Virus record (IMG/VR): IMGVR_UViG_3300042484_002457
Coordinates: 124,001-188,000 of that record
Strand: one strand, 5' to 3'
DNA: 64,000 nt
Shown here: positions 10,015 to 39,744 of the stretch, one piece after another
Layout: every line of letters starts with the position of its first letter
Numbering within the stretch: position 1 is the stretch's first letter
Translations under genes and position numbers: made by a program
The notes under the pieces: generated by a model
What the model was told of the DNA's origin: nothing
Databases searched by the model: none
The model's input: the letters and a program-made list of their open reading frames with translations, nothing else

Positions 10015-10166
10015 GAAGCACTGCTAACGGTCGTGTTATAAGAACACTGCCTGGCGCTACAAAACCTGAAGCTCCTGTACAACCTCAGCAGCCCCAGGCC
10101 CGGATCAAACGAGCTATGCCAATAGCAGCGCTACTACAAAGTCATAGATTCAGACTAAACCCATGA
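10011..10166 (+). CDS. small hypothetical protein (51 aa, not in ORF track)
   Basis: ATGA overlaps at both ends; MRSTANGRVIRTLPG... Confidence 0.5.
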   Translation: MRSTANGRVIRTLPGATKPEAPVQPQQPQARIKRAMPIAALLQSHRFRLNP

Positions 10167-10597
10167 GAAATTTTATCAATCTAATAGAAGCAGTGCAATC
10201 TGGTTGCCCACCAGCTACCCAGAGCATTGAATTGAATCTAAAAAATCGTCAAAAAGCCATTGAAGAATACCATTATGGTCCGTTGAATCCCAACGAGCCC
10301 AATCAAGAATACTGGGCTGAATTGGCTGACAAATGGAACACCAATGACATTGAATCAGTCAAAAACAACCGCTGCGGAAATTGTGCTGCATTTGATATCA
10401 CAGACAAAATGCTAGACTGTATTGCCAAAGGCATTGGCTCAGAGCCTGGGTCAGACCCACAAGGCACAATTGATGCTGGCGATTTAGGCTATTGTAAGTT
10501 TTTGAAATTCAAGTGTGCTGCACTGCGCACCTGTGATGCCTGGGTTGAAGGCGGCCCTGTAACAGATAAAAAAGATGAGAGCACAAGAATTCGTTGA
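10163..10597 (+). CDS. Cys-rich hypothetical protein
   Basis: CGNC...GYC...KC...TCDAW; N-terminus MRNFINLIE. Confidence 0.7.
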   Translation: MRNFINLIEAVQSGCPPATQSIELNLKNRQKAIEEYHYGPLNPNEPNQEYWAELADKWNTNDIESVKNNRCGNCAAFDITDKMLDCIAKGIGSEPGSDPQGTIDAGDLGYCKFLKFKCAALRTCDAWVEGGPVTDKKDESTRIR

Positions 10598-10871
10598 AGC
10601 TGATCTGGGTACTAACCCACGTAGAGCAGCCCGACAAGGGTCAAGACCTCCACGCGGGCACAACCCTGTGCCGCGCTATCGTAGTAAAAAAGCCGAGCCT
10701 GACCAGGAACAACTGGACGAGCTGATGTTCATGAACATGAGTCCCTGCAAAACTGACTGCTCGGGACACAGAGCAGGCTACAAATGGAGCAAGGATCGCG
10801 GCGGTGTCAGCACTGCGTCCTGGAGCGACAGCTTTAATCGCGGTGCTGAAATAGCCCGAGCAGGCTATTAA
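10575..10871 (+). CDS. hypothetical protein, putative internal head protein
   Basis: N-terminus MRAQEFVE; CKTDCSGHRAGYKW module after LDE. Confidence 0.7.
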   Translation: MRAQEFVEADLGTNPRRAARQGSRPPRGHNPVPRYRSKKAEPDQEQLDELMFMNMSPCKTDCSGHRAGYKWSKDRGGVSTASWSDSFNRGAEIARAGY

Positions 10872-11602
10872 CGTCGAGTATAAACAAAATACAACCTACC
10901 CAGTTCGGTAGGTTCTTTTTTGAATGTGTCTAGATTCAAGTTGTATTTTTCTGCAAACGCATTAACAACTTCAAAGCTCCAGGGAAAGATATCCACATAC
11001 GGGCCTGTTCGGTGTGGAATTCCTGGGTTGGCTCGCAAAAAGAATTTGCCACCTGGGCGCAAGAGATTCACACAGTGCGAGAATCTTTCTTCAATTTCAT
11101 CCTGTGAATTAAAGTTGATACTGCCCAGCGCAATGATCACGTCGTAGCTCTCAGGTTTTACTTTGTAATCCAGTATATCTACTTCATAATCAGCAGCGTC
11201 ATTGTAAGGATCAATGCCAACAATATTGTTGATACGCCCCTTGAATGGATGATAGCCGCAACCTACATCTAAGACTTTTTCTGGATTCAGCTTGTTAACT
11301 TCGTCAGCTAGTTCCCAGCCTGTGTGTTCGTAGTCGCCTGTACGCGGCTTCCAGATTTCTGCAAAAAATCGCAATATGTAACGCTCGCTAAGATCATCAA
11401 CAATGTCTTTTAGGGTGCCCACGTAATCACATGGCAGATGTAGCTCTGCTTCTACTGCGTCTTTGAATTTGCGATATCGAGCCGGAGTCCATGGCAACGA
11501 ATCTACAACAGTATTTGCATCGATTGCAATGTTTGCATACTTGGGTAAAGCAAATGCAGTCTGCAAATTTTTTATTAAGAGAGAAAAAATTTTGTTATTC
11601 AT
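10868..11602 (-). CDS. class I SAM-dependent methyltransferase
   Basis: VLDVGCG, GIDPY, YDVIIALGS, LLRPGG. Confidence 0.85.
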   Translation of the reverse strand: MNNKIFSLLIKNLQTAFALPKYANIAIDANTVVDSLPWTPARYRKFKDAVEAELHLPCDYVGTLKDIVDDLSERYILRFFAEIWKPRTGDYEHTGWELADEVNKLNPEKVLDVGCGYHPFKGRINNIVGIDPYNDAADYEVDILDYKVKPESYDVIIALGSINFNSQDEIEERFSHCVNLLRPGGKFFLRANPGIPHRTGPYVDIFPWSFEVVNAFAEKYNLNLDTFKKEPTELGRLYFVYTRR

Positions 11603-11692
11603 AAATATTTTGGTATATACAGTAGAAATTTTACAGGGAATAGTAAAAAATTATAACCTCCCTGGATAATTTATTATATTTAAGGAAACAAC

Positions 11693-12661
11693 ATGAACCT
11701 CAAAAAATTATTAGCAACATTTGCTGTTGCACTTCCGATGCTAGCATTAGCATTTACACCGCCCAAAGTGGTTAACGTCACTGTGGGATATGCACCCGGA
11801 TCTGGTAACGAAACCTCATTTAGGGGAGTTGCAGCCATTGTAGAAAAAGCCAACCCAAACATCACATTTGTAGTTACAAATCGCCCAGGCGCTGACGAAG
11901 TAGTAGCACTAAACCATTTTATGAAACTGCCTGGTGATGGACACAATCTGTATATTAGTAGTCAGCAAGGGGTTTTTACCACTATCGAACAGTGGTATCC
12001 GGATCAGATCAAATTCAACCCGCTGGACATGGAATTGGTCACAACTATTGCTAAATCTCCATTGGCTGTGATTGCCAATATTGATTCTCCTACTAACACT
12101 CCGCAAGAATTACTAGCACGTCTCAAGAACACTAACAAGCCTATTACATTTGGTCTAGGTGCTGGCGCTCACAAGCTGGTGTTTGAATACTTGATGGATC
12201 GAGGCCAAGGCAACCACAATCAAGTCAAGTCTGTGATGTATCGTGGTCCTGCACAAGCCGCACAGGACGTGGCTGGCAATCAGGTAGAGTTTGGAATCAT
12301 GCCTACAGCAGTGGCCTATGGTCTTTATAAAGCAGGAAAAATCAAGTATATTGCATTAGCATCAGAATTTAAACTGACTCAACTGCCTAACGTGCCACTG
12401 TGGAAAGATTCTGGCATGCCCGGTCTGAACATTTATGGTGCTTGGATGATTGCACTACCACCGGGAACTCCTAAGGAAATAGTAAAGTATTATCAGGACT
12501 TGTTTGTGCCAGCCATTAGATCAGCCGACGCCAAACAGTTTTTTGATTCAAACTTGATGTTTCCGGTACCTGCTGAGCAGAGTCCTGAAGGAGCTCGAAA
12601 GTTCATAATGAGTATTCGAGAAACCTGGATCCCATATGTGAAGAAAATGAAGTTAGATTAA
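11693..12661 (+). CDS. Bug/TctC tripartite tricarboxylate transporter substrate-binding protein
   Basis: Signal peptide; VGYAPGSG, VVTNRPGA, DGHNL, YRGPAQAAQDVAGNQV, LPNVP, PPGTPKEIV. Confidence 0.88.
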   Translation: MNLKKLLATFAVALPMLALAFTPPKVVNVTVGYAPGSGNETSFRGVAAIVEKANPNITFVVTNRPGADEVVALNHFMKLPGDGHNLYISSQQGVFTTIEQWYPDQIKFNPLDMELVTTIAKSPLAVIANIDSPTNTPQELLARLKNTNKPITFGLGAGAHKLVFEYLMDRGQGNHNQVKSVMYRGPAQAAQDVAGNQVEFGIMPTAVAYGLYKAGKIKYIALASEFKLTQLPNVPLWKDSGMPGLNIYGAWMIALPPGTPKEIVKYYQDLFVPAIRSADAKQFFDSNLMFPVPAEQSPEGARKFIMSIRETWIPYVKKMKLD

Positions 12662-16633: not shown

Positions 16634-16656
16634 AAAATTACTTAGTAAATAACAAT

Positions 16657-17451: not shown

Positions 17452-17475
17452 TTGTAAGAAGTGCTAAATATCTCT

Positions 17476-17943
17476 ATGTGGATTTTGCACTTTCTTCCTG
17501 ACGCTGTAATACTGTGGTTCACCAACCTGTTGCTGTTTGCGGGTGTTGCACTCACAGTGGCTGGATTTTTTATTCATCGAATTCCGTCCCCGTTGATATA
17601 TCAGTATCAATTGCCATTCAAAATAGTAGGCGTTGTTCTGCTGGTACTGGGCGTGTATTTTCGTGGCGGCTATGCTATAGAAATAACCTGGCGCGAGCGT
17701 GTGGCAGAAGTAGAAGCCCAGTTGCGAGTTGCTGAACAACAATCAGCTCAAGAAAACACACGTATAGAAACTCGAGTAGTTAAAAAGACCGAATACATCA
17801 CACGTCGCGGATCAGATATTGTTCAGTATGTTGACCGTGAAATCGTCCGGTATGACACCAAGTTTGCTCCTGGCGGACAGTGTGAAATACCACGAGAATT
17901 TATCAAGGCCCACAATCAGGCCGCTGAGGCACCACCCAAATGA
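17476..17943 (+). CDS. putative inner-membrane spanin (Rz-like)
   Basis: N-terminal TM helices, coiled coil and C-terminal Cys; near endolysin and lipoprotein genes. Confidence 0.55.
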   Translation: MWILHFLPDAVILWFTNLLLFAGVALTVAGFFIHRIPSPLIYQYQLPFKIVGVVLLVLGVYFRGGYAIEITWRERVAEVEAQLRVAEQQSAQENTRIETRVVKKTEYITRRGSDIVQYVDREIVRYDTKFAPGGQCEIPREFIKAHNQAAEAPPK

Positions 17944-19118
17944 AATTCAAAGACTTTCGAACAGAAGAAAAAGTACGCTTGGATCCCAAGTGTTGGACAG
18001 GTAAAAAAATTGGCAACCCCAAGACCAAGGTCAAGGGTGGAGTTAGAGTCAACAACTGTGTGCCCGCTGAATCTGTTGAAGAGGCTGTAAATCCTGCACA
18101 ACAGGCTGCTATTGCTATTGCTAAAAAGAAAAAGAAACAAGGTCTGAAGGAAGGTACAGACAATCCCTACGGATATCGCAAAGGGCAAACTGTAAAACTT
18201 GGCAATGGTCAACAAGGTCGTGTCATTGATATTTTTGATGACAGCATTGAAGTTTTACTAGTTGGCGGCCGAACAGTCACAGTAGACTTCCGTGATGCAC
18301 GGGTAATCGACGAGCAAGGTGTGGCGGAAGATGCTGTGGCAGATTTCTTGGCTCGTGGTGGAGAAATACAAAAAGGCAAGCTACACAAACCACGCAAGGG
18401 TGAAACTTGGCAAGGATCATCACACATTGGTGCAGCAGGCGGAAAAGGTACCAAAGGCACAGTGTCGGGTCGAGCTGCTAACACCAATCCCAAAGGTGGC
18501 AAGCCAGTGGTCAGTGCTGAAGGTTTCAACCCTGAATACAACGACGAAGCAGGCATGGCCGACAACAATCTTGAAACCTTGGAACGTGCTGTGGCAGGTA
18601 TTGACGACCTAATTCAAACCGGTGATAACTTGCCAGAGTGGTGTCAAGAAAAGATCGCAGTGGCCAAGTCAATGTTGGTGGCTGTATGGGACTACATGGA
18701 AAGTGAAGAAGACTCTGAGGAAGTAGATCCTGAAGTGGACGAAATGTTTGAAGCCATGCAAGACCTGGTGTCAGAAATGGCCCAGAAAAATCGTGTGAGT
18801 GAAGATCTAGTGTGGGAACAGTTTGAAGCCATGCCGGATAACGTACTGTACGAAACAGCAGCTTGGCGTCGCAAAGAAGGCAAAAGCGCCAAAGGTGGAC
18901 TCAACGCCAAGGGTGTGGCCAGCTATCGCAGAGAGAATCCTGGTTCAAAACTACAAACAGCAGTCACAACCAAGCCCAGCAAACTCAAGCCAGGATCCAA
19001 AGCAGCCAAGCGCCGTAAATCATTCTGTGCAAGAATGGGCGGAGTCAAAGGACCAATGAAAAAGCCCAATGGCAAGCCCACACGCAAAGCTCTAGCCCTA
19101 CGTAAATGGAACTGCTAA
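17940..19118 (+). CDS. modular polyprotein, putative internal head protein
   Basis: MKFKDFRTE start; short modules bounded by x-x-E sites; QGVAED linker at 18315; basic C-terminal module ...RRKSFCARM...RKWNC. Confidence 0.75.
   Translation: MKFKDFRTEEKVRLDPKCWTGKKIGNPKTKVKGGVRVNNCVPAESVEEAVNPAQQAAIAIAKKKKKQGLKEGTDNPYGYRKGQTVKLGNGQQGRVIDIFDDSIEVLLVGGRTVTVDFRDARVIDEQGVAEDAVADFLARGGEIQKGKLHKPRKGETWQGSSHIGAAGGKGTKGTVSGRAANTNPKGGKPVVSAEGFNPEYNDEAGMADNNLETLERAVAGIDDLIQTGDNLPEWCQEKIAVAKSMLVAVWDYMESEEDSEEVDPEVDEMFEAMQDLVSEMAQKNRVSEDLVWEQFEAMPDNVLYETAAWRRKEGKSAKGGLNAKGVASYRRENPGSKLQTAVTTKPSKLKPGSKAAKRRKSFCARMGGVKGPMKKPNGKPTRKALALRKWNC
18315..18331 (+). repeat. ninth copy of the QGVAE linker repeat
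   Basis: CAAGGTGTGGCGGAAGA, in frame (QGVAED). Confidence 0.9.
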
Positions 19119-20023: not shown

Positions 20024-20530
20024 ATGAGCAAAAAACAATTACCTCCCGGCAAAATTACCAAATCAGAAGAAGACTGGATGACCAAGAAATGGCGTCCCAT
20101 GATGGCCATTATGTACATGACCGCATGTTTGTTTGACTTTGTGTTCTTCCCTATTATGTTTACTGCGGTACAGTTCTGGGAAGTCAGTGCAGCCAACGAT
20201 GCCTTCCGTCAGTGGGCACCAATAACACTGCAAGGCGGCGGCTTGTTCCACGTGGCCATGGGTGCTGTACTGGGCGTTAGTGCATGGAGTCGTGGACAAG
20301 AGAAAATGGCTGGTGTGACTGGTGGCTCAGCGCCAGCACCTGGCTGGGGGTCAATGCCTGTAGCCAACAACAGCTGGGGCAGCGCACCTGGTGCACAAAC
20401 TGCTGCATACACTCCAGCACCCAGCTGGGGATCAACACCTGTGGCCAGCAACAGCTGGGGCAGCGCACCTGTACAAACAGGTTGGGGAGGCAAAAAGGCT
20501 CCGCCTGAAGCCGAATTCCCTGTATTATAA
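20024..20530 (+). CDS. putative holin with low-complexity WG-repeat tail
   Basis: KWRPMMA followed by TM helices, LFHVAMGAVLGV...RGQEK; directly after the endolysin. Confidence 0.65.
   Translation: MSKKQLPPGKITKSEEDWMTKKWRPMMAIMYMTACLFDFVFFPIMFTAVQFWEVSAANDAFRQWAPITLQGGGLFHVAMGAVLGVSAWSRGQEKMAGVTGGSAPAPGWGSMPVANNSWGSAPGAQTAAYTPAPSWGSTPVASNSWGSAPVQTGWGGKKAPPEAEFPVL
20333..20471 (+). repeat. imperfect ~58-nt direct repeat, period 81 nt, in the holin tail
   Basis: PAPGWGSMPVANNSWGSAP / PAPSWGSTPVASNSWGSAP. Confidence 0.85.
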
Positions 20531-20761: not shown

Positions 20762-20815
20762 CATTTGACCTTGTGCCCCTGGGTCCTGTATAATTAAATG
20801 TACAGGACCTTTTTC

Positions 20816-21577
20816 ATGACTGACTACTACGCCACCCTGGGTGTTGCAAAAACTGCCACTGCCGAGGAAATCAAACGAGCCTATCGTCGACTGGCTTCGC
20901 AACACCATCCTGATCGGGGTGGCAACACTGCCCAATTTCAACAGATTCAAGCGGCCTATGACACACTAGGCGATGCTGCCAAACGTGCCGCTTACGACAA
21001 CCCACAGCCGCAATTTGGTGGATTTGGTTTTCAACAAGGCCAAAACATCCATGACATTTTCAGTCAGATGTTTGGGCAACAACCACGTCGTGGCCACATA
21101 CGCATGACCATTGGAGTTGACTTAGTGGATGTGATCAATGGCAGCACAAGAACTGTGCAACTGGGCACAACACAGGGCTCCAACACAGTGGAAATTGCTA
21201 TACCCCGGGGTATTGACAACGGAGACACAGTGCAGTATGGCGGAATTGGTCCCGGGGGTTCAGACCTCATGGTACAGTTTAGAGTCAACCCCATGCCCAA
21301 TTGGCGCAGAGAAGGTATAAATCTGCACACCGAAGTTCAAGTGTCAATTTGGCAACTGATCCTGGGCAGTGAAATCACCATGACTGCACTCACAGGCAAT
21401 GAGCTTACTATTACAGTGCCCCCAATGACTCAACCCAATACTGTGATGCGCCTACGAGCACATGGAGTACATCATAGGTCTGGACAGCAGGGCGACATCA
21501 TGGTAAGAATTGTGGCCCAAATTCCCCAGAACATTCCCGCCGAAGTCATGGCAGCAATACAGCAACACTGCCCGTAA
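20816..21577 (+). CDS. dnaJ: DnaJ/CbpA-like co-chaperone
   Basis: DYYATLGV, HHPDRGG J-domain, G/F region and C-terminal domain; no zinc finger. Confidence 0.92.
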   Translation: MTDYYATLGVAKTATAEEIKRAYRRLASQHHPDRGGNTAQFQQIQAAYDTLGDAAKRAAYDNPQPQFGGFGFQQGQNIHDIFSQMFGQQPRRGHIRMTIGVDLVDVINGSTRTVQLGTTQGSNTVEIAIPRGIDNGDTVQYGGIGPGGSDLMVQFRVNPMPNWRREGINLHTEVQVSIWQLILGSEITMTALTGNELTITVPPMTQPNTVMRLRAHGVHHRSGQQGDIMVRIVAQIPQNIPAEVMAAIQQHCP

Positions 21578-21591
21578 TGTCAGTAGATCAC

Positions 21592-21620
21592 TTGACACCA
21601 ACGACTGTAAGTAGTATAAT
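21592..21620 (+). promoter_or_regulatory. sigma70-type promoter of clpA
   Basis: TTGACA, 17 nt spacer, TATAAT, then AAGGAG. Confidence 0.8.
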
Positions 21621-21644
21621 AATCACTGTAACTCAAGGAGCTTT

Positions 21645-24553: not shown

Positions 24554-24721
24554 ATGGCAAAAATACACGAAGAAACAGTTGTGATCACACTGAGCAAGTT
24601 GATCAAAGAACGAGACACTGAAGAACAGTATCTTGCTACCAATGACATCTGCGATGCATTGCAATCAGTAGCAGAAGAACTCCTGGGTCAAGGTGTATTG
24701 GTTGAAGTTGTGAGAGCATAA
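24554..24721 (+). CDS. small hypothetical protein (55 aa, not in ORF track)
   Basis: MAKIHEETVVITLSKL...VEVVRA; TAAATA at 24541; TAATG coupling to the next gene. Confidence 0.7.
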   Translation: MAKIHEETVVITLSKLIKERDTEEQYLATNDICDALQSVAEELLGQGVLVEVVRA

Positions 24722-25089
24722 TGACCCCCACAACACAAACCATTCTGGGCACCACAATCTACGGTGAAGCTGCGGGCAACTACGACGGCAGCAGCCAGGA
24801 TTGGTTCAGTGTGGCTCGCAAAGCTGCTGACTACTATCGTGGATACGGTGGTGTTCAAACTGTGACAATATCAGTTGCTGGGTTTGAAGGCATCATGTAC
24901 ATCGAAGCCACTCTGGATTCTGACCCTGACTCTGCGGCCTGGTTTCCAACCTATACCTATGGTGACGGATCTAGCACACCTGTCACCGACTATCATCCTG
25001 CTACCATTACCGGAAACTTTACATGGATACGTGTAAGAGTTGAGGGATTTTCAGGTGGCACAATAAACTCAGTAACCATAACATACTAA
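24721..25089 (+). CDS. hypothetical beta-rich protein (possibly virion)
   Basis: 122-aa ORF coupled to both neighbours. Confidence 0.7.
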   Translation: MTPTTQTILGTTIYGEAAGNYDGSSQDWFSVARKAADYYRGYGGVQTVTISVAGFEGIMYIEATLDSDPDSAAWFPTYTYGDGSSTPVTDYHPATITGNFTWIRVRVEGFSGGTINSVTITY

Positions 25090-28354: not shown

Positions 28355-31300
28355 ATGAATATCGAAGAGTTAGATTCCTTCAATCTTGCAGACGCTGTGA
28401 AGTTTCACAATCAGTTAAATCCCCGATTGTGGGATCAGCGTGAACATCTCAAGCCTGATGTGCACGCCAAGCTCATGGAAATTGCTAGAGATTTCCAAGA
28501 GTTTCTGGGCGTTCCTGACCTTGAAGTCAAGGACATCACAGTATCTGGCTCAAATGCTGCATACAATTACACACCGCACAGCGATGTAGATCTACACCTT
28601 GTGGTGGATATGCCTGACGCTAAAAACAGCGAAGTGTTTCGCGAGCTGTTTGACGCCAAGAAATTCCAGTACAACGCTGAACATGACATTCGTATTGGCG
28701 GCTATGATGTAGAACTGTATGTGCAAGATGCTGAACAAGAGCATCACTCACAGGGCATTTACAGCCTGTTGCAAAACCGTTGGATCAGTGTGCCCAAGAG
28801 ACGCAAACCTGATGTAGATGATATCAGTGTGAAAAGCAAATACCAAGATGTGGGACACAGAATTGAAGCTGCTATCCGTGGCGGTGACGCTGCACAAATG
28901 GAAGATGTTTGGAACAAACTACGTGTGATGCGCAAGCAGGGTCTTGAGCGTGAAGGCGAGTTTGCCCCAGAAAACATTGTGTTCAAGATGCTGCGCAACA
29001 ACGGCACCATTGGCAACCTCAAACAAGCAAGACAGGCTGTGCGTGATCGAGAGCTGAGTCTTGCTGAAGTCAACCGCCCCAAGCAACGTGTGCATTATGG
29101 CTTTGTAAGTGAAAGCCCCGATGGTGTAAATCCCAGTACCAAGATGTTTCTTGAAGAAGATGATGCCGAAAGTCTTGTAACTGAATTTATTTTTACCACG
29201 GCTGACAAGCTGGGCATTAAACGTATACCAAAAATTCATATACACACCAATGATGACTGGAGCAGAGAAAACAACAGTTTTGGAATGTTTGTTCCTGACA
29301 CATATGAACTGCATGTGAGTTTGATAAATCGCCATCCCATGGATGTGATGCGCACCATTGCGCACGAACTAGCACATGTCCGTCAACACGAGATCAAGCC
29401 GGTCAAACCCGGTGATGGAGAAACTGGAAGTGATGTTGAAAACGAAGCGCATGCCATAGCTGGTATTGTCATGCGAGACTTTGCCAGCAGCCATCCTGAA
29501 TATTTTGAAAAGCCTGCTGTGAGCGAAAGCTCGGGATACATTCCTACCCGAGCACAGGCTCAAGATCCTCGCTTTAAAATGGCCCTGACTGTGGACATCA
29601 AGCCAGGACAAACTGGTAAGGAAGCCAACAAGCTGGCCTTGCAAACAGATGCACAAGGCCGTCCAGCACTGTTGATGAAAACAGCAAACCTGCGTGAAGG
29701 CCGGATGCCGCAGCCCAGCCAAGGGCAGGGCCAGTATAGAGATTTAAACAAGCCCCTGGGTCCAGAAACACCTCCTACCATGCCCGCAGGCACTGTCAAG
29801 GTAGATGTGAGTGATGTGTATGACTGGTACAAGCTGGGCAGTCATATCAGCAACCTCAAAGGTCTGGGCAAACACGACTTTGGCGCAGGACCTCCTAGTA
29901 CTATCATCAGTTTTGGTGATGAGGAAACTGAACACAAGTACATCCAAGACCTTGAAAAAACTGGACTCACTACCACAGATATTGACCCCAAGGATCCCAA
30001 GCAGCCTCCAGGAATGAAACGTCAAAAGACTGATCCCACCTACAACGTGGCAGAAGATGACATTGTAGAAAGCCTGCGTCAAGAATTTGCTTTGCTGGAA
30101 GACGAGTACATCAGCGAAATCAAAATGACCGGAAAGAACCTGCGAGCCGAAGCTGCTCAAACAGGTGCGCAGGCTGGCATGGAATTTGAAATGATTGTGC
30201 CCAACGTTGAGACCGAAGAGCTAGACCCTGAATACGAACCAGACTGGGATCAGGATCAGCGTACTAGAAGCTTCAGTGACATTCGAGACTTTTTCCACGA
30301 TGGAGACTACAACGGTCGTCGCGAAGCAGACAACCTAATGGAAGAAATACAAAACGAGTATGAAGAATGGCAAGCAGAACAAACTGACGAAGCCTGGGCT
30401 CGAGATGGAGTAGATTACATGCGTGACTTTGTTGAAGTCAATGACTTGTTTGATCGTGAAGAAGCTATAGACACTGCTCGAGACGAGGTCATTGACGCTA
30501 ACCCTGACTTGCCACCTGAAAGCAAAGACTTCCAGGACCTGCTTCGTGCCAGACTCGATGAACTACAAGAACAGTTTGTGCTAGAATCGTTTGAAGATCA
30601 AGGCCGCATCTACAATGACGCATTGCAAGCGTTTGCAGAAGAGCAAAGAGACGAATACGACGAACGCAGTTTCTTGGATGACAAGTATCCCATGATGACA
30701 GATATTCAAAGCAACTTTGATATTTCATGGCCCCACTACTACAACATCAACGATGGTCAAGACAGTGGAGAAGTGGATGTAGATCAAGTAGCTGATGAGT
30801 TTGGCTCATACATGGGCAAACCTGTGAATGCCAGCAGACAATACCATGGCGGTCGTCGCGAAGCAGGAACCTATGTAGTAGAACCCGACGGCAGCTTAGA
30901 AGGTGACAACCCAGGTGATGGTGGCCTTGAGTTTGTTAGTCCGCCCATGCCCATAGATGAAATGATTTCAGACTTGAACAAGGTCAAGGCCTGGGCAGAC
31001 AAGACTGGTTGCTATACCAACGACTCTACAGGCTTGCACATCAATATCTCAGTGCCCAATTATTCAATTGACAAACTGGACTATGTAAAATTGGCCATCC
31101 TCATGGGCGACGAATACATTCTGGACTTGTTTGGTCGCTCAGGCAACACCTATGCCAAATCAGCCATGGGCAAGATCAAGTCAGCACTGAAACAAAAACC
31201 CGAAGCGTCAGCACAAATCATGGACTTGATGAAACAAGGACTGGACGGTGCTGCAACCAAGGCCATACACACAGGTATCACAGACAAGTACACGTCAATC

Positions 31301-32476
31301 AACACCAAGACTGGCTATATTGAATTCCGTAGCCCCGGTGGTGACTGGCTGGACAGCAATTTTGACAAGATTGAAAACACCCTGTTGCGTTTTACTGTGG
31401 CCCTGAGTGCTGCTATCAATCCAGAAGCATACCGCAAAGAATACTTGACCAAGCTGTACAAGTTGTTGTCCGAAGGCATGGCGGACAAGAGTGACGTAAA
31501 CATTATTCAGTTGTTCTCCAACTACTCAGCTGGTGAACTGGACAAAGCTGCTCTAATCCGTCAAGTGCGTCAAAAGCAACTGGCTCGCAATGTTGCCAAG
31601 GGCAAGGCCACAGGCAAGATGTGGTGGAATGTTTCTAGACCAGGATACATGGGCAGCATCGAAGTTGTTGCTAACAGCAAAGAAGAAGCCATTGATGTTG
31701 CATTACAGCCGAGCAATTATCCAAACTGGGCAAGTGCTAGAAATACATTACAGGCTAAACCATTACGTCCATACCAAGAAAAGCCAAGCGCACCTGCACA
31801 ACCTGCTGCGGACAATCAAGGCAACTGGGGTATCTGGTTGGATGCTGCAGAACGCTTTGTCCGAATACCTCGCACCGAAACTGGTGGCGACGGGCAAGCC
31901 TTGCGTAGATTCTCTAGCCAAGCGGCTGCAATGGCGTTCTTGGAGCGAACTCGAGAAGAGAATCCACTAATGAGAAGAGACATCAGCATTCGCGAAATCC
32001 CTGCAGACTATCAGTGGCCACCCGTTGCACCGGCTGTTAACCGCAATACGCTGACACCAACCGGTCCTGGACCTTGGGAAGTGTTTAGAATCAGTGACGG
32101 GTCAAGTGTAGCAGAGCTGGGGCAGACCAACCGCATGAGTGCTGAAGTAGAAGCTCGCGGAGTGATTGATCAACGTGGCGAAGCACCTGAACTGTATGGA
32201 GTAAGAACTCGTCAGTCTGACGCAGCACAAGGTGGCACAGTTGATGTAGGGGGAGAAACACCTGCAACAGCACCGCAGACACTGACTCGTCCCGGACAAG
32301 GCCAACAACAGTTCACAGGCACATGGCGAGTGTTAGATCCTGAAGACCGTGAGATCTATCGCTTTAGTGGTGTGGGCAACAACCAATCAGATGCCAATCG
32401 TGTGGCCCTGAACTGGATGCGTCAAAATCCTGGTCGCATGCAAGCAGGTGTCACAGTGGTCCCGGAGATGACCTAA
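28355..32476 (+). CDS. multidomain polyprotein: nucleotidyltransferase, HExxH metallopeptidase-like and putative amidoligase domains plus C-terminal modules
   Basis: GSNAAYNYTPHSDVDLH; AHELAHVRQ; GMEFEM...EPDGSL...LEFVSPP...TNDSTGLHINIS...IEFRSPGG. Confidence 0.75.
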   Translation: MNIEELDSFNLADAVKFHNQLNPRLWDQREHLKPDVHAKLMEIARDFQEFLGVPDLEVKDITVSGSNAAYNYTPHSDVDLHLVVDMPDAKNSEVFRELFDAKKFQYNAEHDIRIGGYDVELYVQDAEQEHHSQGIYSLLQNRWISVPKRRKPDVDDISVKSKYQDVGHRIEAAIRGGDAAQMEDVWNKLRVMRKQGLEREGEFAPENIVFKMLRNNGTIGNLKQARQAVRDRELSLAEVNRPKQRVHYGFVSESPDGVNPSTKMFLEEDDAESLVTEFIFTTADKLGIKRIPKIHIHTNDDWSRENNSFGMFVPDTYELHVSLINRHPMDVMRTIAHELAHVRQHEIKPVKPGDGETGSDVENEAHAIAGIVMRDFASSHPEYFEKPAVSESSGYIPTRAQAQDPRFKMALTVDIKPGQTGKEANKLALQTDAQGRPALLMKTANLREGRMPQPSQGQGQYRDLNKPLGPETPPTMPAGTVKVDVSDVYDWYKLGSHISNLKGLGKHDFGAGPPSTIISFGDEETEHKYIQDLEKTGLTTTDIDPKDPKQPPGMKRQKTDPTYNVAEDDIVESLRQEFALLEDEYISEIKMTGKNLRAEAAQTGAQAGMEFEMIVPNVETEELDPEYEPDWDQDQRTRSFSDIRDFFHDGDYNGRREADNLMEEIQNEYEEWQAEQTDEAWARDGVDYMRDFVEVNDLFDREEAIDTARDEVIDANPDLPPESKDFQDLLRARLDELQEQFVLESFEDQGRIYNDALQAFAEEQRDEYDERSFLDDKYPMMTDIQSNFDISWPHYYNINDGQDSGEVDVDQVADEFGSYMGKPVNASRQYHGGRREAGTYVVEPDGSLEGDNPGDGGLEFVSPPMPIDEMISDLNKVKAWADKTGCYTNDSTGLHINISVPNYSIDKLDYVKLAILMGDEYILDLFGRSGNTYAKSAMGKIKSALKQKPEASAQIMDLMKQGLDGAATKAIHTGITDKYTSINTKTGYIEFRSPGGDWLDSNFDKIENTLLRFTVALSAAINPEAYRKEYLTKLYKLLSEGMADKSDVNIIQLFSNYSAGELDKAALIRQVRQKQLARNVAKGKATGKMWWNVSRPGYMGSIEVVANSKEEAIDVALQPSNYPNWASARNTLQAKPLRPYQEKPSAPAQPAADNQGNWGIWLDAAERFVRIPRTETGGDGQALRRFSSQAAAMAFLERTREENPLMRRDISIREIPADYQWPPVAPAVNRNTLTPTGPGPWEVFRISDGSSVAELGQTNRMSAEVEARGVIDQRGEAPELYGVRTRQSDAAQGGTVDVGGETPATAPQTLTRPGQGQQQFTGTWRVLDPEDREIYRFSGVGNNQSDANRVALNWMRQNPGRMQAGVTVVPEMT

Positions 32477-33462
32477 TGAGAGCACAAGAATTTGTAACAG
32501 AACTGTTTGAGCCAGGCAAAAAGTGGCAGTGGAGTTTTACTGGCAGTGAAGAAGCAGTAGCAGTATTTCATGTTGGTGAAGTGCCTTACATGTTCCATGC
32601 ATATGGCGCCGTCGGTGAATGGGAAGCAGAGTTCAAGCGGTATGGTAACAAACTAGATCGATCGCAAAAGTTTGGACTAACTGGCACTGGTAACTCAGCA
32701 GAAGTCATGAGCACAGTGGTTGACATCATGCGAGCGTTCTTGGAAAAATACAAGGACAAGATACAAGTGCTGACATTCAGTGCCAAGGAAGATTCCCGTC
32801 AGGGTCTATATGCCCGAATGGTCAAACGACTGCTGCCCGACTGGACCATGAAACAATCCGGTGAGCACTTTGTTCTTGTGGCTCCCAAACAAGATGTCAC
32901 AGAAACATGGGGTGTTGAAAAGTATCCTATTCCGCTGCCAATTGGGCAGTACCTTGCTGTTGGTAGTGATGAGTTTGCTCCGCCGGGCAACTATGCCAGT
33001 GCAGACGATCTTGTGGATGATGTGTACGACTTGATAGATGCAGGTGTTGAGCCCACAGTGGTTGCAGTTGATCCCAAGACTCTGTTGGCCACACAAGACT
33101 GGCTTAGTAACGAAGGCGGCGGCGATCCCTTGTTTGACGAGTACCCGGACAAGCCTGTGATATACAAGAAGGCAGGCAAGCTGTACATCCTTGACGGGCA
33201 TCACAGAACCACACGAGCTTGGAAAGCTGGTAGACCTATTTCAGTATACCTGTTTGGGGACGATCAACAAAACGAACTGGACGAAAACTTTGCAGATGGC
33301 CGAAACCCACAAGACAAAGGTGATTCAAAGCGTCACGGTATCAATACCAAAGCATCAGTTAGTAGTCTACGCAAAACTGCCAAACAAGGCGGCCGCAAAG
33401 GACAACTGGCACACTGGCTGGCTAACATGAAGTCTGGTAGAGCAAAGGCCAAACGAAAATGA
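32476..33462 (+). CDS. modular putative internal protein with a ParB/Srx-like module
   Basis: MRAQEFVTE start; ATQDWL...YILDGHHR; basic terminal module after LDE. Confidence 0.7.
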   Translation: MRAQEFVTELFEPGKKWQWSFTGSEEAVAVFHVGEVPYMFHAYGAVGEWEAEFKRYGNKLDRSQKFGLTGTGNSAEVMSTVVDIMRAFLEKYKDKIQVLTFSAKEDSRQGLYARMVKRLLPDWTMKQSGEHFVLVAPKQDVTETWGVEKYPIPLPIGQYLAVGSDEFAPPGNYASADDLVDDVYDLIDAGVEPTVVAVDPKTLLATQDWLSNEGGGDPLFDEYPDKPVIYKKAGKLYILDGHHRTTRAWKAGRPISVYLFGDDQQNELDENFADGRNPQDKGDSKRHGINTKASVSSLRKTAKQGGRKGQLAHWLANMKSGRAKAKRK

Positions 33463-33920
33463 GCGCATATCGACTTGATCCTTTTTATGGCATTGGTGCT
33501 GTTTCCTTGAATGCAAACACCGCTAGAGCTCAGATAGAGCTGCGACCCAGTATGTTTTTGAATTTGGCACACAGACTTGATGCCAACAGTGAATGTGCAC
33601 TCCGTATAATACCCTACATCAGAACCAGATTGCAGTCAAGAGGTATTGGATATCCAATACTGCACATTGCGCCGCCTTTGGAATGGCGTAATAACGATTT
33701 TTCCAAACCTTGTCAAGTTATTGAAAGCAACGGACGCCATCGTATGCATGCAATTATGGAGGTTCAAGGCGATGAACCTATTCCAGTATTGTTGGTACCT
33801 TGGCAAGATATTACACAACAAGAGTTAAATACATGGCTACCTCGCATGCGTGAGCAAATGCTCAGTCAGGATGGCGAGTTGGTATCAGGTCAATTATGGG
33901 ATCAAACACATGAGAGCTAA
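33459..33920 (+). CDS. ParB/Srx-like hypothetical protein
   Basis: YPIL...VIESNGRHRM...IPV. Confidence 0.5.
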   Translation: MSAYRLDPFYGIGAVSLNANTARAQIELRPSMFLNLAHRLDANSECALRIIPYIRTRLQSRGIGYPILHIAPPLEWRNNDFSKPCQVIESNGRHRMHAIMEVQGDEPIPVLLVPWQDITQQELNTWLPRMREQMLSQDGELVSGQLWDQTHES

Positions 33921-34110
33921 AGAGTTTGTTAATGAAAGTGTTGCGCCGGGCTTTCACGTGTATCAAGCACGAGTCAAAGTCAACAATCCTCTTTACTCTA
34001 ACAGTATTGATGTTGCAGTGTTTGCCAAAGGTCCGGCTATGGCTCGCGCTCTGTTACAGGCACAGTACGGCAAAGATAGTGTTGTGACCAACGTTACACA
34101 AATTGCATAA
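33910..34110 (+). CDS. small putative internal protein
   Basis: ATG 33910, MRAKEFVNE. Confidence 0.65.
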   Translation: MRAKEFVNESVAPGFHVYQARVKVNNPLYSNSIDVAVFAKGPAMARALLQAQYGKDSVVTNVTQIA

Positions 34111-34144
34111 TTCTCTGTGGCGCAAAGCCACAGATACATAAGTG

Positions 34145-37347: not shown

Positions 37348-38209
37348 GACATTTCTCTTTTACTTTGGCAAGGTGCCGATTAAAGTTGGCTATGGTCAAG
37401 GTGTCCCAATCCATTTGCATACTGAGACTGAGATCAGGTATGGCATCGCATATGGAATTGTGCGCGGAACCAAATCCAGCAATGTTGCTCAAGGTATTGT
37501 ATTCGTAACGATGTTGTGCTTGGTATGTTACACTGCCCTGGGACACTGCCCAGTTACCCAGTAGCTCGTATTCACTGAACCATTTGATAATGTTGCCTGT
37601 ACCCCAAGGCGGAACTGTGGGCATCCCTGGTACCGCATCAATAATTGCATCCAACCAGTGCTTGTTGGGCCAACGCTGTTGCAGATGTTCACGAAGTTTT
37701 ACAAAATCTTTTTTTCTAACTGCACATAATTCAGTAACAAAGCAATGTGGTGATTGATGGCGCAACCCTGTGATGGCTTCAAACACCCCATTGTAACTGC
37801 CTTGGGTGGTGTTCATTAGTGACAACAAATTTAACTGATTGTTGGGATAGGGATTGTATGGCTCAAGCATAAATGTATCAGCATCGTGCATGAGAAAAAC
37901 ATCATGCTCCAATATGTCAAGATATGCTAACTTGATAGCTTGCTGGCGCAACCACCAGCCACGGTAGTCATCTGGAAACACCCAGTTGTTGACTTCAGGG
38001 TATTGTTTATATATTATGCTATCGTTAATGTATTCAAAGCGACTGCTGTCAATATTGTATTTGTGCCAGACTGGCTCAAGTTCGTCCCGTGTCATTGGAC
38101 TAGCAATCACTGTGGTATCAATACCTTTAAGGTTGTGATCCCACTGCATAGCAAATGCTGCATGAGGCACACGATACTTGGCCAAAAACAAAACTCTTGC
38201 AACTGTCAT
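37328..38209 (-). CDS. glycosyltransferase-like (DUF6492-type) protein
   Basis: GWWLRQQAIKL, MHDADTF, FSEYELLG; shares motifs with 34145-34984. Confidence 0.55.
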   Translation of the reverse strand: MTVARVLFLAKYRVPHAAFAMQWDHNLKGIDTTVIASPMTRDELEPVWHKYNIDSSRFEYINDSIIYKQYPEVNNWVFPDDYRGWWLRQQAIKLAYLDILEHDVFLMHDADTFMLEPYNPYPNNQLNLLSLMNTTQGSYNGVFEAITGLRHQSPHCFVTELCAVRKKDFVKLREHLQQRWPNKHWLDAIIDAVPGMPTVPPWGTGNIIKWFSEYELLGNWAVSQGSVTYQAQHRYEYNTLSNIAGFGSAHNSICDAIPDLSLSMQMDWDTLTIANFNRHLAKVKEKCHAIQSL

Positions 38210-39204
38210 GTTTGATTACAACTGTTGACACAGGCATATAACCTGCCTGTGGAAATACTAGTGTTTTGCCAAGATGCTTCCACCTGATCAAACCACTCCA
38301 TACAATGCTCTAGACTATGCTCAAGAGCATTGTTTTCACGAACCATGTCAGTTAATTGGCTGTTTCCTGGATGTGTCATTTGTCCAGGATAGAATCCCAA
38401 ATAGCAACAGGGATAAACAGATCCATCGGCGGCCAAATATATTTCTCTATTGACTTTGTGTTGACATCTCAAATTCAATTGCTCAGTATCTTTTTGTAGT
38501 TGTATTGTTTTGGCATCAAACCATGTGACATGACTGTGAAGCAAAGCGTCAATAGGTGGCGGTGTTGATGCAGGGCCCAACCAATGCGAAAAGGTGCCAT
38601 CTCGGGCATACACTGGCCCTGCATCGCGGCCATCATAGATGTTTTCAAACCGCGCAAACCCCCACTCCTGGGCCAATCTTTTGCATTCAGCTTCTTGGTG
38701 ACGATTGTGATCAAACGGTACAAATCTCCAAAGTGCTTGCCCCCCAGCATTGATATAGGCACGAGCATTTTCTGTTACTCGATTCCAATCTGTATCTTGA
38801 CGGTACAGTGCGTGGGTGTCAGCAAGGCCGTCCAGAGCAAAGCCTATAGTGACCAAGGGATGGGCCATCTGTGCCCACCAATCAGGGGTTCTTGCTCCCC
38901 CATTGGTGTTGATGTTTACTTGTATGCCCTGACTGCTCAACCACTGCACAATTTCTGCTCCGTCTCGGGCCAGTGCAAAATCTCCAAGATTGCCGTTGAA
39001 ATTTACAGCATAGTTGGAATTGAGTTTTAGTTGGGGTATCAAGGGCTCAATAATATGTTTAAACTCAGGTAGCCTAAGCTCGCATGTGGGATATCCTGAG
39101 TTGTAATCTACCCCGCGGTAGTTTCTTGGGCACATTGGACACCTGGCATTACACCGTGTTGTGAGTTCAACATGAACACGACGTATATCGCTAACTTTCA
39201 GCAT
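38206..39204 (-). CDS. radical SAM protein with SPASM/twitch-like domain
   Basis: CNARCPMC, NTNGG, ADGSVYPCCY; start reassigned to ATG 39204 just after minus-strand TATAAATA. Confidence 0.85.
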   Translation of the reverse strand: MLKVSDIRRVHVELTTRCNARCPMCPRNYRGVDYNSGYPTCELRLPEFKHIIEPLIPQLKLNSNYAVNFNGNLGDFALARDGAEIVQWLSSQGIQVNINTNGGARTPDWWAQMAHPLVTIGFALDGLADTHALYRQDTDWNRVTENARAYINAGGQALWRFVPFDHNRHQEAECKRLAQEWGFARFENIYDGRDAGPVYARDGTFSHWLGPASTPPPIDALLHSHVTWFDAKTIQLQKDTEQLNLRCQHKVNREIYLAADGSVYPCCYLGFYPGQMTHPGNSQLTDMVRENNALEHSLEHCMEWFDQVEASWQNTSISTGRLYACVNSCNQT

Positions 39205-39241
39205 TGGATATTTATAGGCATACATTTTGCTAAATATTATT

Positions 39242-39544
39242 ATGCAAGCTGAATTTATTATTGCCGTGGTAGATGTTTATTGCAAATGGACTGGCGAGCA
39301 CCCACGCTATCGCTGCTATGTTAATGATGAGCTATTTGCCGAGCGCACATGGATATGGCACAACGAGTACCTTGAAGAAGAATTTCAAATTCAAGCGCCA
39401 CCAGGTAACTATAAAATCAGATACGAGCTGGTTGATCCAGCCAATGCCAAGTTAAAAATTCGCAATGTTAGAGTGTGTGTGGGTCCAGCAGTGGTAGACC
39501 CAAATGGCATAGTTCAAATATACACGCCGGAGAAACCACAATGA
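39242..39544 (+). CDS. hypothetical protein
   Basis: ATG 5 nt after TAAATA (39231-39236). Confidence 0.65.
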   Translation: MQAEFIIAVVDVYCKWTGEHPRYRCYVNDELFAERTWIWHNEYLEEEFQIQAPPGNYKIRYELVDPANAKLKIRNVRVCVGPAVVDPNGIVQIYTPEKPQ

Positions 39545-39744
39545 GACTGCGGGAAATTACTGAAAACGTCAGCACTGTAGCAGGATCTTTTGCTCCAGTC
39601 GTTATGCCCATGGGCACTGTGTCAAGAAACGGCGGAGGCTTGCTTTCAGGTAAATATACAACTGATCCTACGCCTAACACGCCCAAGGAATACAAAAGGA
39701 ACAAAAATGCTCGCGGACGCTTTAAAAACTCTCCTGGCAACTGA
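39541..39744 (+). CDS. small putative internal protein
   Basis: MRLREITE start; GGAG upstream. Confidence 0.6.
   Translation: MRLREITENVSTVAGSFAPVVMPMGTVSRNGGGLLSGKYTTDPTPNTPKEYKRNKNARGRFKNSPGN

What the first reader, a model, noticed from the sequence alone, without database searches (positions are those of the whole stretch)
10163..39744. Family of N-terminal peptides resembling the T4 internal-protein capsid targeting sequence
Seen: otherwise unrelated ORFs begin MRAQEFVE (10575), MRAQEFVTE (32476), MRAKEFVNE (33910), MRLREITE (39541), MKFKDFRTE (17940) and MRNFINLIE (10163); the 6847 polyprotein begins MLLNHLFE. ORFs 10575 and 32476 share ATGAGAGCACAAGAATT. Established: T4 IPII/IPIII use the N-terminal MKTYQEFIAE for head packaging, and it is removed after the Glu. 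Inference: this phage addresses many cargo proteins to the capsid with a portable leader, which complements the linker system.
Basis: partly seen in the sequence, partly recalled or inferred. Interest (0 to 1): 0.78.

Follow-up and report, generated by a model that had tools for sequence, protein, structure and literature searches.

The report
Portable capsid-targeting-like leader in jumbo phage
Many unrelated proteins of this uncultivated T4-related jumbo phage start with the same nine-residue tag, which looks and behaves like the T4 signal that loads proteins into the phage head and is then cut off, so the phage's injected protein cargo could be read from sequence alone.

Summary
M-R-x-[QKR]-E-[FIL] starts four window genes (10575, 32476, 33910, 39541), against 0.006 expected. 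Orthologues of 17940 carry the canonical tag. 10163 and 6847 belong to two other conserved N-terminal classes.

The tag, consensus M-R-A-x-E-F-[IVL]-x-E, is portable. In IMG/VR it precedes at least 32 unrelated protein families, and the same mature domain occurs behind the tag or inside a fusion protein. Synonymous codons vary freely, so selection acts on the peptide.

Its last three residues, [IVL]-x-E, also precede these domains when they are internal, and they match the QGVAEG linkers. That is the T4 gp21 cleavage motif.

A 349-kb relative carrying the tag has the T4 head module: portal, Peptidase_S77 protease, scaffold and Gp23 capsid protein. Its predicted capsid maturation junction (KYLKE|NAS) aligns with leader-plus-mature start of one tagged family.

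In the isolate PA5oct, the small protein between portal and protease starts MKINDIITE and was detected in virions.

Tagged proteins are unusually basic or carry effector-type domains.

The best reading is a T4-type capsid-targeting propeptide, greatly expanded (confidence about 0.6). Encapsidation and cleavage of these proteins are untested.

The parts
10575..10871 (+). Gene for a 98-aa basic protein. Leader MRAQEFVE is 10575-10598 (8-residue variant ending F-V-E). Mature part pI 9.8.
   Evidence: homologues begin MRAQEFVTE or MRAQEFVVE
32476..33462 (+). Gene for a 328-aa two-domain protein. Leader MRAQEFVTE is 32476-32502. Domain A is DUF6934-like. The internal junction QDVTE|TWG is 32890-32904. 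Domain B is ParB-like (DGHHR).
   Evidence: AF2 gives pLDDT below 50 for residues 1-23 and 139-150
33910..34110 (+). Gene for a 66-aa basic protein. Leader MRAKEFVNE is 33910-33936. Mature pI 9.7.
   Evidence: orthologues begin MRAQEFIAE|SVAPGF and MRSHEFIKE|SVAPGF
39541..39744 (+). Gene for a 67-aa very basic protein. Leader MRLREITE is 39541-39564. Mature pI 10.7. Its 3' end overlaps the start of a Dps/ferritin-like gene.
   Evidence: orthologues begin MRAQEFIKE|NASVGATSSG, which aligns to the capsid-protein junction at E=2e-6; the window copy itself does not align significantly
17940..19118 (+). Gene for a 392-aa basic protein with a C-terminal DUF6321 domain. The diverged leader MKFKDFRTE is 17940-17966. 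One linker, QGVAE, is at 18315-18329.
10163..10597 (+). Gene for a 144-aa Cys-rich acidic protein with the variant N-terminus MRNFINLIE (10163-10189). It ends in L-I-E but lacks the E-F core.
   Evidence: orthologues begin MRNYINLME, MRDLINIME, MRELINFIE; the same domain occurs internally in fusion proteins
6847..10014 (+). Gene for a 1055-aa multi-module protein with the class-2 N-terminus MLLNHLFE (6847-6870). It has eight QGVAEG linkers, with the G codon of GVAE at 7525, 7765, 7972, 8341, 8575, 8794, 9439 and 9628. One module is a TonB_C domain.

Best explanation
The nine-residue N-terminus, consensus M-R-A-x-E-F-[I/V/L]-x-E, is proposed to be a capsid-targeting propeptide of the T4 type.

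Inferred mechanism:
- The front part (R2, A3, E5, F6) docks the newly made protein onto the scaffolding core of the assembling prohead.
- The last three residues, [I/V/L]-x-E, are the site where the T4-like prohead serine protease (Peptidase_S77) cuts after Glu. This releases the mature protein inside the head, from where it would be ejected with the DNA.
- The same scissile motif joins the modules of fusion proteins (QDVTE|T, QGVAE|G), so multi-domain precursors would be cut into separate cargo proteins by the same enzyme.

Shown here: the motif, its portability, peptide-level selection, the equivalence of leader end and internal junctions, the T4-type head module in a close relative, and the properties of the tagged proteins.

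Inferred, not shown: binding to the core, cleavage, encapsidation and ejection.
For: 1. Non-random and portable.
- 4 of 76 window N-termini match, against 0.006 expected.
- The 32476 protein has 2884 homologues in which the same leader precedes different domains.
The broader set of leader-type proteins in the fetched loci falls into at least 32 single-linkage families.
- The same pattern gives only 28 hits in 596 Gb of cellular genomes, about the chance level.

2. Selection on the peptide.
- In 147 non-redundant leader-type starts, R2, E5 and E9 are fixed by the selecting pattern. A3 (141/147), F6 (143/147) and I/V/L7 (146/147) are nearly invariant on their own.
- Ala uses all four codons, and Glu and Phe use both.
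- Nothing beyond a ribosome-binding site is conserved upstream.

3. Leader end equals domain junction.
- Domains A and B and the KWSxKYK and RLDxKCW modules are preceded by [I/V/L]-x-E when N-terminal. Internally, domains A and B almost always are (one domain-B junction needs a one-residue shift). The KWSxKYK module does so in only some cases.
- QGVAEG linkers occur in 52 of 1461 proteins of the related loci. In the window they are concentrated in 6847, 17940 and 32476.

4. Fit to T4.
- The T4 CTS is MKTYQEFIAE and is cut once (PMC8442874).
- gp21 cuts after L/I-X-E. Targeting depends on residues 4 and 7, processing on residues 8 and 10 (PMC9026906).
- T4 F7, I8 and E10 correspond to the conserved F6, [IVL]7 and E9 here.

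5. The machinery exists.
- The window's PolB and the related contigs' sheath, TerL, gp4 and gp15 homologues are T4-like.
- The 349-kb contig that holds tagged genes and a PolB region 77% identical in DNA to the window encodes Portal_T4, Peptidase_S77 (80.9 bits), a scaffold protein and a Gp23 capsid protein, in T4 order.

6. Link to the capsid protein.
- The predicted junction KYLKE|NASAGSTSAG aligns with QEFIKE|NASVGATSSG of a tagged 66-aa family at E=2e-6.

7. Head-core position and virion detection.
- The small gene after the portal starts M-[RNKQ]-[AF]-x-[ED]-[LFI] in 28 PA5oct-like loci.
- In PA5oct it is gp333, MKINDIITE, flagged as detected in virions by ESI-MS/MS.

8. Cargo properties.
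- 92% of tagged 50-100 aa proteins have pI above 9, against 37% of other proteins.
- Larger tagged proteins carry ParB, NUDIX, GNAT, nucleotidyltransferase, deaminase or GH19 domains, as in capsid-packaged polyvalent proteins (PMC5512222).

9. Accessibility.
- The leader and the A/B junction are predicted to be flexible.
Against: - There are no virion proteomics or N-terminal mapping for any tagged protein of this clade.
- The window's leader proteins have no detectable homologue in PA5oct.
- PA5oct has only about four leader-like starts, and only two are flagged as detected by mass spectrometry. Its flags also include obvious non-structural enzymes.
- Some family members keep MRAxEF but lack Glu9, so cleavage cannot be universal.
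- The head module was found on a relative, not on the window's own contig.
- The capsid-protein cleavage site is inferred by analogy. The multiple alignment with T4 gp23 is gapped there.
- The window's own 39541 protein does not align significantly to the capsid protein.
- Tagged genes sit among replication and metabolic genes, and no late promoter could be assigned to them.
Confidence: 0.6

Rival explanations
1. The motif is only a processing site. The leader and linkers are cut by a phage or host protease in the cytoplasm, as with viral polyproteins. The products act inside the infected cell and never enter the capsid.
For: [I/V/L]-x-E sits at module boundaries and in flexible segments. Tagged genes lie in a replication and metabolism region. 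There is no virion evidence for them.
Against: A pure cleavage site does not explain the conserved M-R-A-x-E-F part in front of it, nor family members that keep this part without Glu9. The only protease with this specificity seen in the lineage is the prohead protease, encoded inside the head module. In T4 that enzyme is incorporated into the prohead core (PMC9026906).
Confidence: 0.15
2. The leader is a recognition tag for another machine. One candidate is the phage-encoded ClpA/B-like unfoldase with DnaJ (21645-23909, 20798-21577). Another is a membrane or secretion route. It would then control folding, turnover or localisation rather than packaging.
For: The phage encodes a Clp_N-containing AAA+ protein and DnaJ next to the tagged genes. 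PA5oct has ClpA, ClpX, ClpS and FtsH homologues. Cleavage after Glu9 would often expose Leu, a classical N-degron residue (own knowledge).
Against: Nothing specific links the tag to Clp. The tag is hydrophilic and is not a Sec or Tat signal. Its similarity to the T4 CTS, to the post-portal head protein and to the capsid-protein junction points to the head.
Confidence: 0.08
3. The conserved element acts at the nucleic-acid level. It could be a translation-initiation enhancer, a binding site for a translational regulator, or a recombination hotspot that shuffles gene cassettes.
For: Two window genes share 17 identical bases. Arg2 is strongly biased to AGA/CGA. In T-even phages the internal-protein loci are hyperplastic (PMC12373910, citing Repoila 1994).
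Against: Synonymous sites of Ala3, Glu5, Phe6 and Glu9 vary at or near background usage, and the upstream DNA is not conserved. The tag persists across head-module loci with GC content from 0.35 to 0.54. The highly expressed structural genes do not carry it.
Confidence: 0.05
4. The shared N-terminus is just inherited from a common ancestor of paralogous genes and has no function of its own.
For: Several tagged proteins share modules such as DUF6321, DUF6934 and the ParB-like domain.
Against: Mature parts fall into at least 32 families with no detectable similarity. The same domain is found with and without the leader, depending only on whether it is N-terminal. The leader is far better conserved than the sequence that follows it.
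Confidence: 0.03

Closest known systems
[quoted passage not shown]
   Same: Both are short N-terminal peptides directly after Met and are placed on otherwise unrelated, mostly basic proteins. Both have a Q-E-F-[I/V]-x-E core and end in a hydrophobic-x-Glu site. Both lineages have a T4-type Peptidase_S77 protease, scaffold and Gp23 capsid protein.
   Different: The leader here is one residue shorter, with R-A in place of K-T-Y. Val is common at the position where T4 has Leu or Ile. It is used by dozens of families per clade rather than about three per genome, and on large enzyme-bearing proteins as well as small ones. It is combined with internal linkers carrying the same site. No experiment has been done.
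Polyvalent proteins of phages and conjugative elements (Iyer et al. 2017, PMC5512222)
   Same: Both are multi-domain proteins combining ParB-like, Pol-beta nucleotidyltransferase, GNAT, NUDIX-type and lysozyme-type domains. Both are proposed to travel with the DNA and to be processed.
   Different: In those proteins, processing is ascribed to an in-built zincin-like metallopeptidase domain. Here no such domain was seen. Modules are separated by [V/I]-x-E linkers that fit the prohead protease, and an N-terminal tag is present.
Long propeptides of ejection and inner-body proteins in phiKZ, 201phi2-1 and SPN3US (PMC5694885)
   Same: These are jumbo phages with many head-internal proteins cut after Glu by a gp21-related protease. 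Their propeptides are thought to target proteins to the prohead.
   Different: Their motif is S/A/G-x-E or A-x-E. Most propeptides are 80-130 residues long and are not a shared portable tag. The lineage (Chimalliviridae-like) is different.
Pseudomonas jumbo phage PA5oct (Arenbergviridae), the closest isolate found
   Same: TerL is 52.6% identical. The tail, head and DnaJ-ClpA-PolB regions are collinear. It has a T4-type head module, and the post-portal protein gp333 starts MKINDIITE and is flagged as virion-detected.
   Different: It has only about four leader-like starts. No QGVAEG linker system was looked for or seen. None of the window's tagged proteins has a homologue there.

Membership tests
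T4-type capsid targeting sequence | Short (about 10 aa) peptide at the extreme N-terminus | tested here: met
   The leader is 8-9 residues, directly after Met, at gene starts only.
T4-type capsid targeting sequence | Ends in the gp21 cleavage motif L/I-x-E | tested here: met
   Position 7 is I 87, V 47, L 12 of 147. Glu9 was fixed by the selection pattern, and Glu also precedes the internal domain junctions, which were not selected that way. Val is a conservative extension of the T4 motif (PMC9026906).
T4-type capsid targeting sequence | Targeting residues in the front half (T4 residues 4 and 7) | tested here: inconclusive
   Phe equivalent to T4 F7 is present in 143 of 147 leaders. The residue equivalent to T4 Y4 is Ala. 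The function of either is untested (PMC9026906).
T4-type capsid targeting sequence | The same leader occurs on mature proteins that are otherwise unrelated | tested here: met
   There are at least 32 single-linkage families. The same domains occur with or without the leader, depending on their position.
T4-type capsid targeting sequence | The genome encodes a gp21-type prohead protease with a scaffold core | tested here: met
   Met for a close relative: Peptidase_S77 scores 80.9 bits between the portal and the scaffold/Gp23 genes on the 349-kb contig that also holds tagged genes. The window's own contig outside the window could not be read.
T4-type capsid targeting sequence | Tagged proteins are in the virion, and the leader is removed | not testable with these tools
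   The only indirect evidence is that PA5oct gp333 (MKINDIITE) carries the ESI-MS/MS flag. No N-terminal mapping is available.
Polyvalent proteins (Iyer 2017) | Several effector-type domains in one polypeptide of a phage or plasmid | tested here: met
   The 28355 protein has nucleotidyltransferase and amidoligase domains. The 32476 protein has DUF6934 and a ParB-like domain. Homologues are fused to NUDIX, GNAT, deaminase and GH19 domains.
Polyvalent proteins (Iyer 2017) | In-built zincin-like metallopeptidase for processing | tested here: not met
   No peptidase family was found in the scanned tagged proteins. Not all of them were scanned.

The most novel reading that the evidence does not exclude
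This abundant freshwater jumbo-phage clade may write a two-part code into a large share of its accessory proteome: MRAxEF for 'load into the head' and [V/I]-x-E for 'cut here'. Dozens of enzymes and small basic proteins per genome, including modules released from QGVAEG-linked polyproteins, would then be packaged and injected as a programmable effector set. The tag itself appears to derive from the end of the capsid-protein propeptide. Small tagged proteins that copy the capsid maturation junction could act as competing substrates or regulators of the head protease.
Probability: 0.3. Interest if true: 0.8.

Novelty: new variant of a known kind. Interest (0 to 1): 0.62.

Why it matters
If the tag works like the T4 CTS, the packaged and injected proteins of a whole uncultivated jumbo-phage clade can be listed from sequence alone. 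That clade has hundreds of contigs in IMG/VR. The list would give a ready catalogue of candidate early effectors and anti-defence enzymes.

It would also show that the T4 head-loading device is old and scalable. It is linked here to polyprotein-like precursors cut by the head protease, which has not been described for T4 relatives.

The 9-residue tag and the 6-residue linker would be simple handles for loading foreign proteins into large capsids.

No paper in the searchable library mentions these motifs in phages.

Tried and rejected
- Megablast and tblastn of the tagged proteins against isolated phages gave no match, so there is no direct experimental relative.
- The T4 late promoter TATAAATA and an enriched GGTAAATA motif are not enriched in the window. 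Only 16 of 243 tagged genes have an upstream gap of at least 50 nt, so expression timing could not be inferred.
- T4 head proteins used as queries found no head genes in the loci fetched up. The head module is neither next to the sheath nor next to TerL. It was reached only through PA5oct and by walking upstream past the tail-fibre genes.
- One exact-protein look-up failed, probably because of a different start call.
- The PA5oct-like portal loci first found mostly belong to other lineages and were used only for the post-portal protein.
- A PA5oct-wide scan found few leader-like starts, so its proteome cannot test the hypothesis statistically.
- The AlphaFold model of the 32476 protein has mean pLDDT 64. 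It was used only to note flexible segments, and no fold search was run.
- The multiple alignment of T4 gp23 with the clade's capsid proteins is gapped at the cleavage region, so equivalence of the sites is an inference.
- The chance-paralogy and DNA-level explanations were considered and rejected on the codon and family counts.


Full report
**Observation**

The core pattern M-R-x-[QKR]-E-[FIL] occurs four times in the six-frame translation. Each occurrence is a + strand gene start: 10575, 32476, 33910 and 39541. Base-shuffled windows give 0.15 matches on average (maximum 2 in 100). Composition-matched random N-termini give 0.006 matches for 76 proteins, against 4 observed. The pattern is therefore real and not due to chance.

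The list is not uniform:
- 17940 (MKFKDFRTE) is a diverged copy. Its orthologues begin MRAQEFITE, MRANEFIVE or MRINDIINE.
- 10163 (MRNFINLIE) is a separate variant, conserved among its own orthologues.
- 6847 (MLLNHLFE) belongs to a second class, M-x-[LI]-N-[DEQ]-L-[FY]-E, found on large linker-containing proteins.

**Source of the window**

The window is bases 124,001-188,000 of IMG/VR contig IMGVR_UViG_3300042484_002457, which is 209.5 kb long. Locus L032 is 100% identical to it over 9.2 kb. No isolated phage matches at the DNA level.

The family B polymerase is of the T4 gp43 type. The best matches among isolates are Sinorhizobium phage Phosso, Agrobacterium phage Atu_ph07 and the Rak2-like jumbo phages. 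Related contigs reach 300-370 kb. They carry T4-like sheath, tube, gp15-like, gp4-like and TerL genes.

By TerL, the closest isolate is Pseudomonas jumbo phage PA5oct, at 52.6% identity. The window is collinear with PA5oct from the clamp loader through DnaJ, ClpA and PolB to QueE.

**The leader is portable**

The 32476 protein has 2884 homologues in metagenomes. In these, the same leader precedes different mature sequences. It precedes domain A (LFxPGKxW), domain B (xWGVEK..IPLP, ParB-like) and several others. Some proteins have two leader-like segments in tandem.

It gave 131 matches in 120 loci, and every match is followed by an open frame. The shortest complete frame is 64 aa, and some frames run off the end of a locus. 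The wider set of leader-type proteins in the fetched loci falls into at least 32 single-linkage families.

The same pattern gives 28 hits in 596 Gb of bacterial and archaeal genomes. By my arithmetic about 17 are expected by chance, so the leader is essentially confined to viral contigs.

**Selection is on the peptide**

I examined 147 non-redundant leader-type starts.
- R2, E5 and E9 were fixed by the selecting pattern.
- A3 is present in 141 of 147.
- F6 is present in 143 of 147.
- Position 7 is I, V or L in 146 of 147.
- Positions 4, 8 and 10 onwards vary.

Ala uses all four codons. Glu5 is split 59/41 between GAA and GAG. Phe6 and Glu9 follow background codon usage. Only Arg2 is biased, towards AGA and CGA. 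Upstream DNA shows only a purine-rich ribosome-binding region. This argues against a DNA- or RNA-level element.

**Anatomy: a docking part and a cutting part**

The last three leader residues form [I/V/L]-x-E. The same triplet precedes the same domains when they are internal to a fusion protein:
- Domain A follows SITE, VVKE or PVNE.
- Domain B follows QDVTE, QGVTE, QNVAE, LGVAE and similar sequences in all but one of 37 distinct contexts. The one exception fits after a one-residue shift.
- The RLDxKCW module follows the rule in its single internal case.
- The KWSxKYK module does so in only some internal cases.

In the window's own 32476 protein, the A/B junction reads QDVTE|TWG. The QGVAEG linkers are the same kind of site. 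There are eight in 6847 and one in 17940, and 52 of 1461 proteins in the related loci carry one. One relative reads MRAQEFIVE-GVAEG directly.

AlphaFold2 gives a low-confidence model of the 32476 protein, with mean pLDDT 64. Residues 1-23 and 139-150, the leader and the junction, score below 50. That fits flexible, accessible segments.

**Fit to T4**

The T4 CTS is MKTYQEFIAE. It is cut once, next to the CTS, and foreign proteins fused to it are packaged (PMC8442874, PMC3012670). The protease gp21 cuts after L/I-X-E. Targeting depends mainly on CTS residues 4 and 7, and processing on residues 8 and 10 (PMC9026906).

Aligned on Q-E-F, T4 F7, I8 and E10 correspond to F6, [IVL]7 and E9 here. T4 head proteins read from the T4 genome show the same kind of start: gp22 MLKEQLIAE, gp21 MNEPQLLIE and gp24 MAKINELLRE. 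The gp23 maturation site is SFLTE|A at residue 65.

**The head machinery exists in this clade**

PA5oct has the following gene order:
- portal;
- gp333;
- gp332;
- head maturation protease;
- a scaffold-like protein;
- major head protein.

By walking upstream from the tail genes, I reached the head module of IMGVR_UViG_3300034104_005687, a 349-kb contig. This contig also holds tagged genes (L060, L084). Its PolB region is 77% identical in DNA to the window. Its head module contains, in order:
- Portal_T4 (E = 4.6e-104);
- a 72-aa protein starting MLLQEFW;
- an acidic 286-aa protein;
- Peptidase_S77 (80.9 bits, cut-off 27);
- a scaffold protein;
- a Gp23-type capsid protein (E = 1.9e-96).

The scaffold gene has more than 600 relatives in IMG/VR, like the clade's TerL.

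**Links between the leader and the head**

- The capsid protein reads ..NTRKYLKE|NASAGSTSAGNIATLN. The 66-aa tagged family orthologous to window gene 39541 reads MRAQEFIKE|NASVGATSSGSVAT. The two align at E = 2e-6. The window copy itself is too diverged to align significantly. The leader thus resembles the end of the capsid propeptide, as the T4 CTS (QEFIAE|A) resembles gp23 (SFLTE|A).
- In 28 PA5oct-like portal loci, the small gene after the portal starts M-[RNKQ]-[AF]-x-[ED]-[LFI]. This is the position of T4 core genes 67 and 68.
- In PA5oct that protein, gp333 (MKINDIITE), carries the ESI-MS/MS virion flag. The published study lists 93 virion-linked proteins (PMC7318152).
- Two tandem tagged genes of 121-128 aa lie inside the structural gene cluster of the clade, between the tail genes and TerL.

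**The tagged proteins**

Mature tagged proteins are unusually basic.

| Size class | Tagged, pI above 9 | Other proteins, pI above 9 |
|---|---|---|
| 50-100 aa | 92% | 37% |
| 200-400 aa | 46% | 12% |
| 400 aa or more | 36% | 2.5% |

In the window, the mature parts have these pI values:

| Gene | Mature pI |
|---|---|
| 10575 | 9.8 |
| 17940 | 9.2 |
| 33910 | 9.7 |
| 39541 | 10.7 |

T4 internal proteins are likewise highly basic (PMC8442874).

Larger tagged proteins carry DUF6934, ParB_N, DUF6886, GP88 or GH19 domains. In homologues they also carry NUDIX, GNAT, nucleotidyltransferase and deaminase domains. This repertoire resembles the polyvalent proteins proposed to be packaged and delivered with DNA (PMC5512222). 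None of the window's recognisable replication or housekeeping genes carries the tag. These include PolB, the clamp loader, ClpB-like, DnaJ and PhoH.

**Weak points**

- No experiment shows packaging or cleavage of any tagged protein of this clade.
- The window's tagged proteins have no PA5oct homologue.
- PA5oct has only about four leader-like starts, two of them with the mass-spectrometry flag. Its flags include enzymes such as ribonucleotide reductase.
- Some relatives keep MRAxEF without Glu9.
- The capsid cleavage site is inferred, because the alignment with T4 gp23 is gapped there.
- The head module is on a relative, not on the window's contig.
- Expression timing could not be assessed.

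**Verdict**

The finding is a real, strongly non-random, portable N-terminal peptide. The best explanation is a T4-type capsid-targeting propeptide whose scissile end is shared with the inter-module linkers (confidence about 0.6).

The main rival is cleavage without encapsidation. Clp or other targeting, a nucleic-acid element and plain paralogy are less likely.

The principle is known from T4 and its close relatives. What is new is its scale, its use on enzyme-bearing proteins, its coupling to polyprotein-like linkers and its apparent origin from the capsid propeptide. No paper in the searchable library mentions MRAQEF or QGVAEG in phages.

Noticed in passing
window 6847-10014: This 1055-aa protein is built of about nine short modules separated by eight near-identical QGVAEG linkers. 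One module is a TonB C-terminal domain (E = 2e-17), preceded by a twin-arginine-signal-like stretch. The N-terminal region is rich in Gly.
   Followed up: partly
window 39541-39744; L015:11638-11838; L493:1187-2383: The small tagged 66-67 aa proteins copy the capsid protein's predicted propeptide-to-mature junction (E|NASxGxTSSGxxAT). The match is E = 2e-6 for an orthologue and not significant for the window copy. They might be decoy substrates or regulators of the head protease.
   Followed up: partly
window 39707-40150: A Dps/ferritin-like gene (PF00210 in the orthologues) starts inside the 3' end of the tagged gene 39541. The pair is conserved in related contigs.
   Followed up: no
window 20798-23909: The phage encodes DnaJ and a 754-aa ClpA/B-like double AAA+ protein with a Clp_N domain. 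They are collinear with PA5oct gp187 and gp186. PA5oct also has ClpX, ClpS, FtsH and Hsp20 homologues.
   Followed up: partly
window 5670-6847, 20024-20530, 24721-25089, 43759-44019, 48420-49142: These untagged genes are homologues of PA5oct proteins annotated as virion structural proteins: gp189, gp188, gp178, gp185, gp174 and gp170. All but gp188 carry the ESI-MS/MS flag. They lie in a region that otherwise looks like replication and metabolism.
   Followed up: partly
window 28355-32476: This 1373-aa polyvalent-type protein has a nucleotidyltransferase domain, shared with cyanophages, and an amidoligase domain. Its stop overlaps the start of the tagged gene 32476 (ATGA). Orthologues start MNxxELDSY, a possible very short propeptide.
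   Followed up: no
window 11693-12661: This gene encodes a TctC-family periplasmic solute-binding protein with a signal-peptide-like N-terminus. That is unusual cargo for a phage.
   Followed up: no
L131, L134, L207, L272 and other tail-module loci: Two tandem tagged genes of 121-128 aa lie between the tail genes and TerL. One family contains NRVMMAVAMA and the other LPGLSxxDPY. A staphylococcal-nuclease-like gene and a radical SAM gene lie nearby.
   Followed up: partly
PA5oct 179881-181020 (L366): A second 'head maturation protease' paralogue, gp212, carries the mass-spectrometry flag. It sits next to gp213, whose internal Met gives MKIKEIILE, a leader-like start.
   Followed up: no
related loci, upstream regions: The 8-mer GGTAAATA, often as AGGTAAATAAA, is found upstream of 5% of genes that have an intergenic gap, against 0.1% in the coding background. 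It is a possible late-promoter-like motif of the clade. It is not enriched in the window.
   Followed up: partly
Genome-contig hits L593, L595, L596, L578: Short contigs binned into Legionella, Polynucleobacter, Chitinophagaceae and Accumulibacter MAGs carry the exact leader pattern. They are probably mis-binned phage fragments and give at most weak hints about the host.
   Followed up: no
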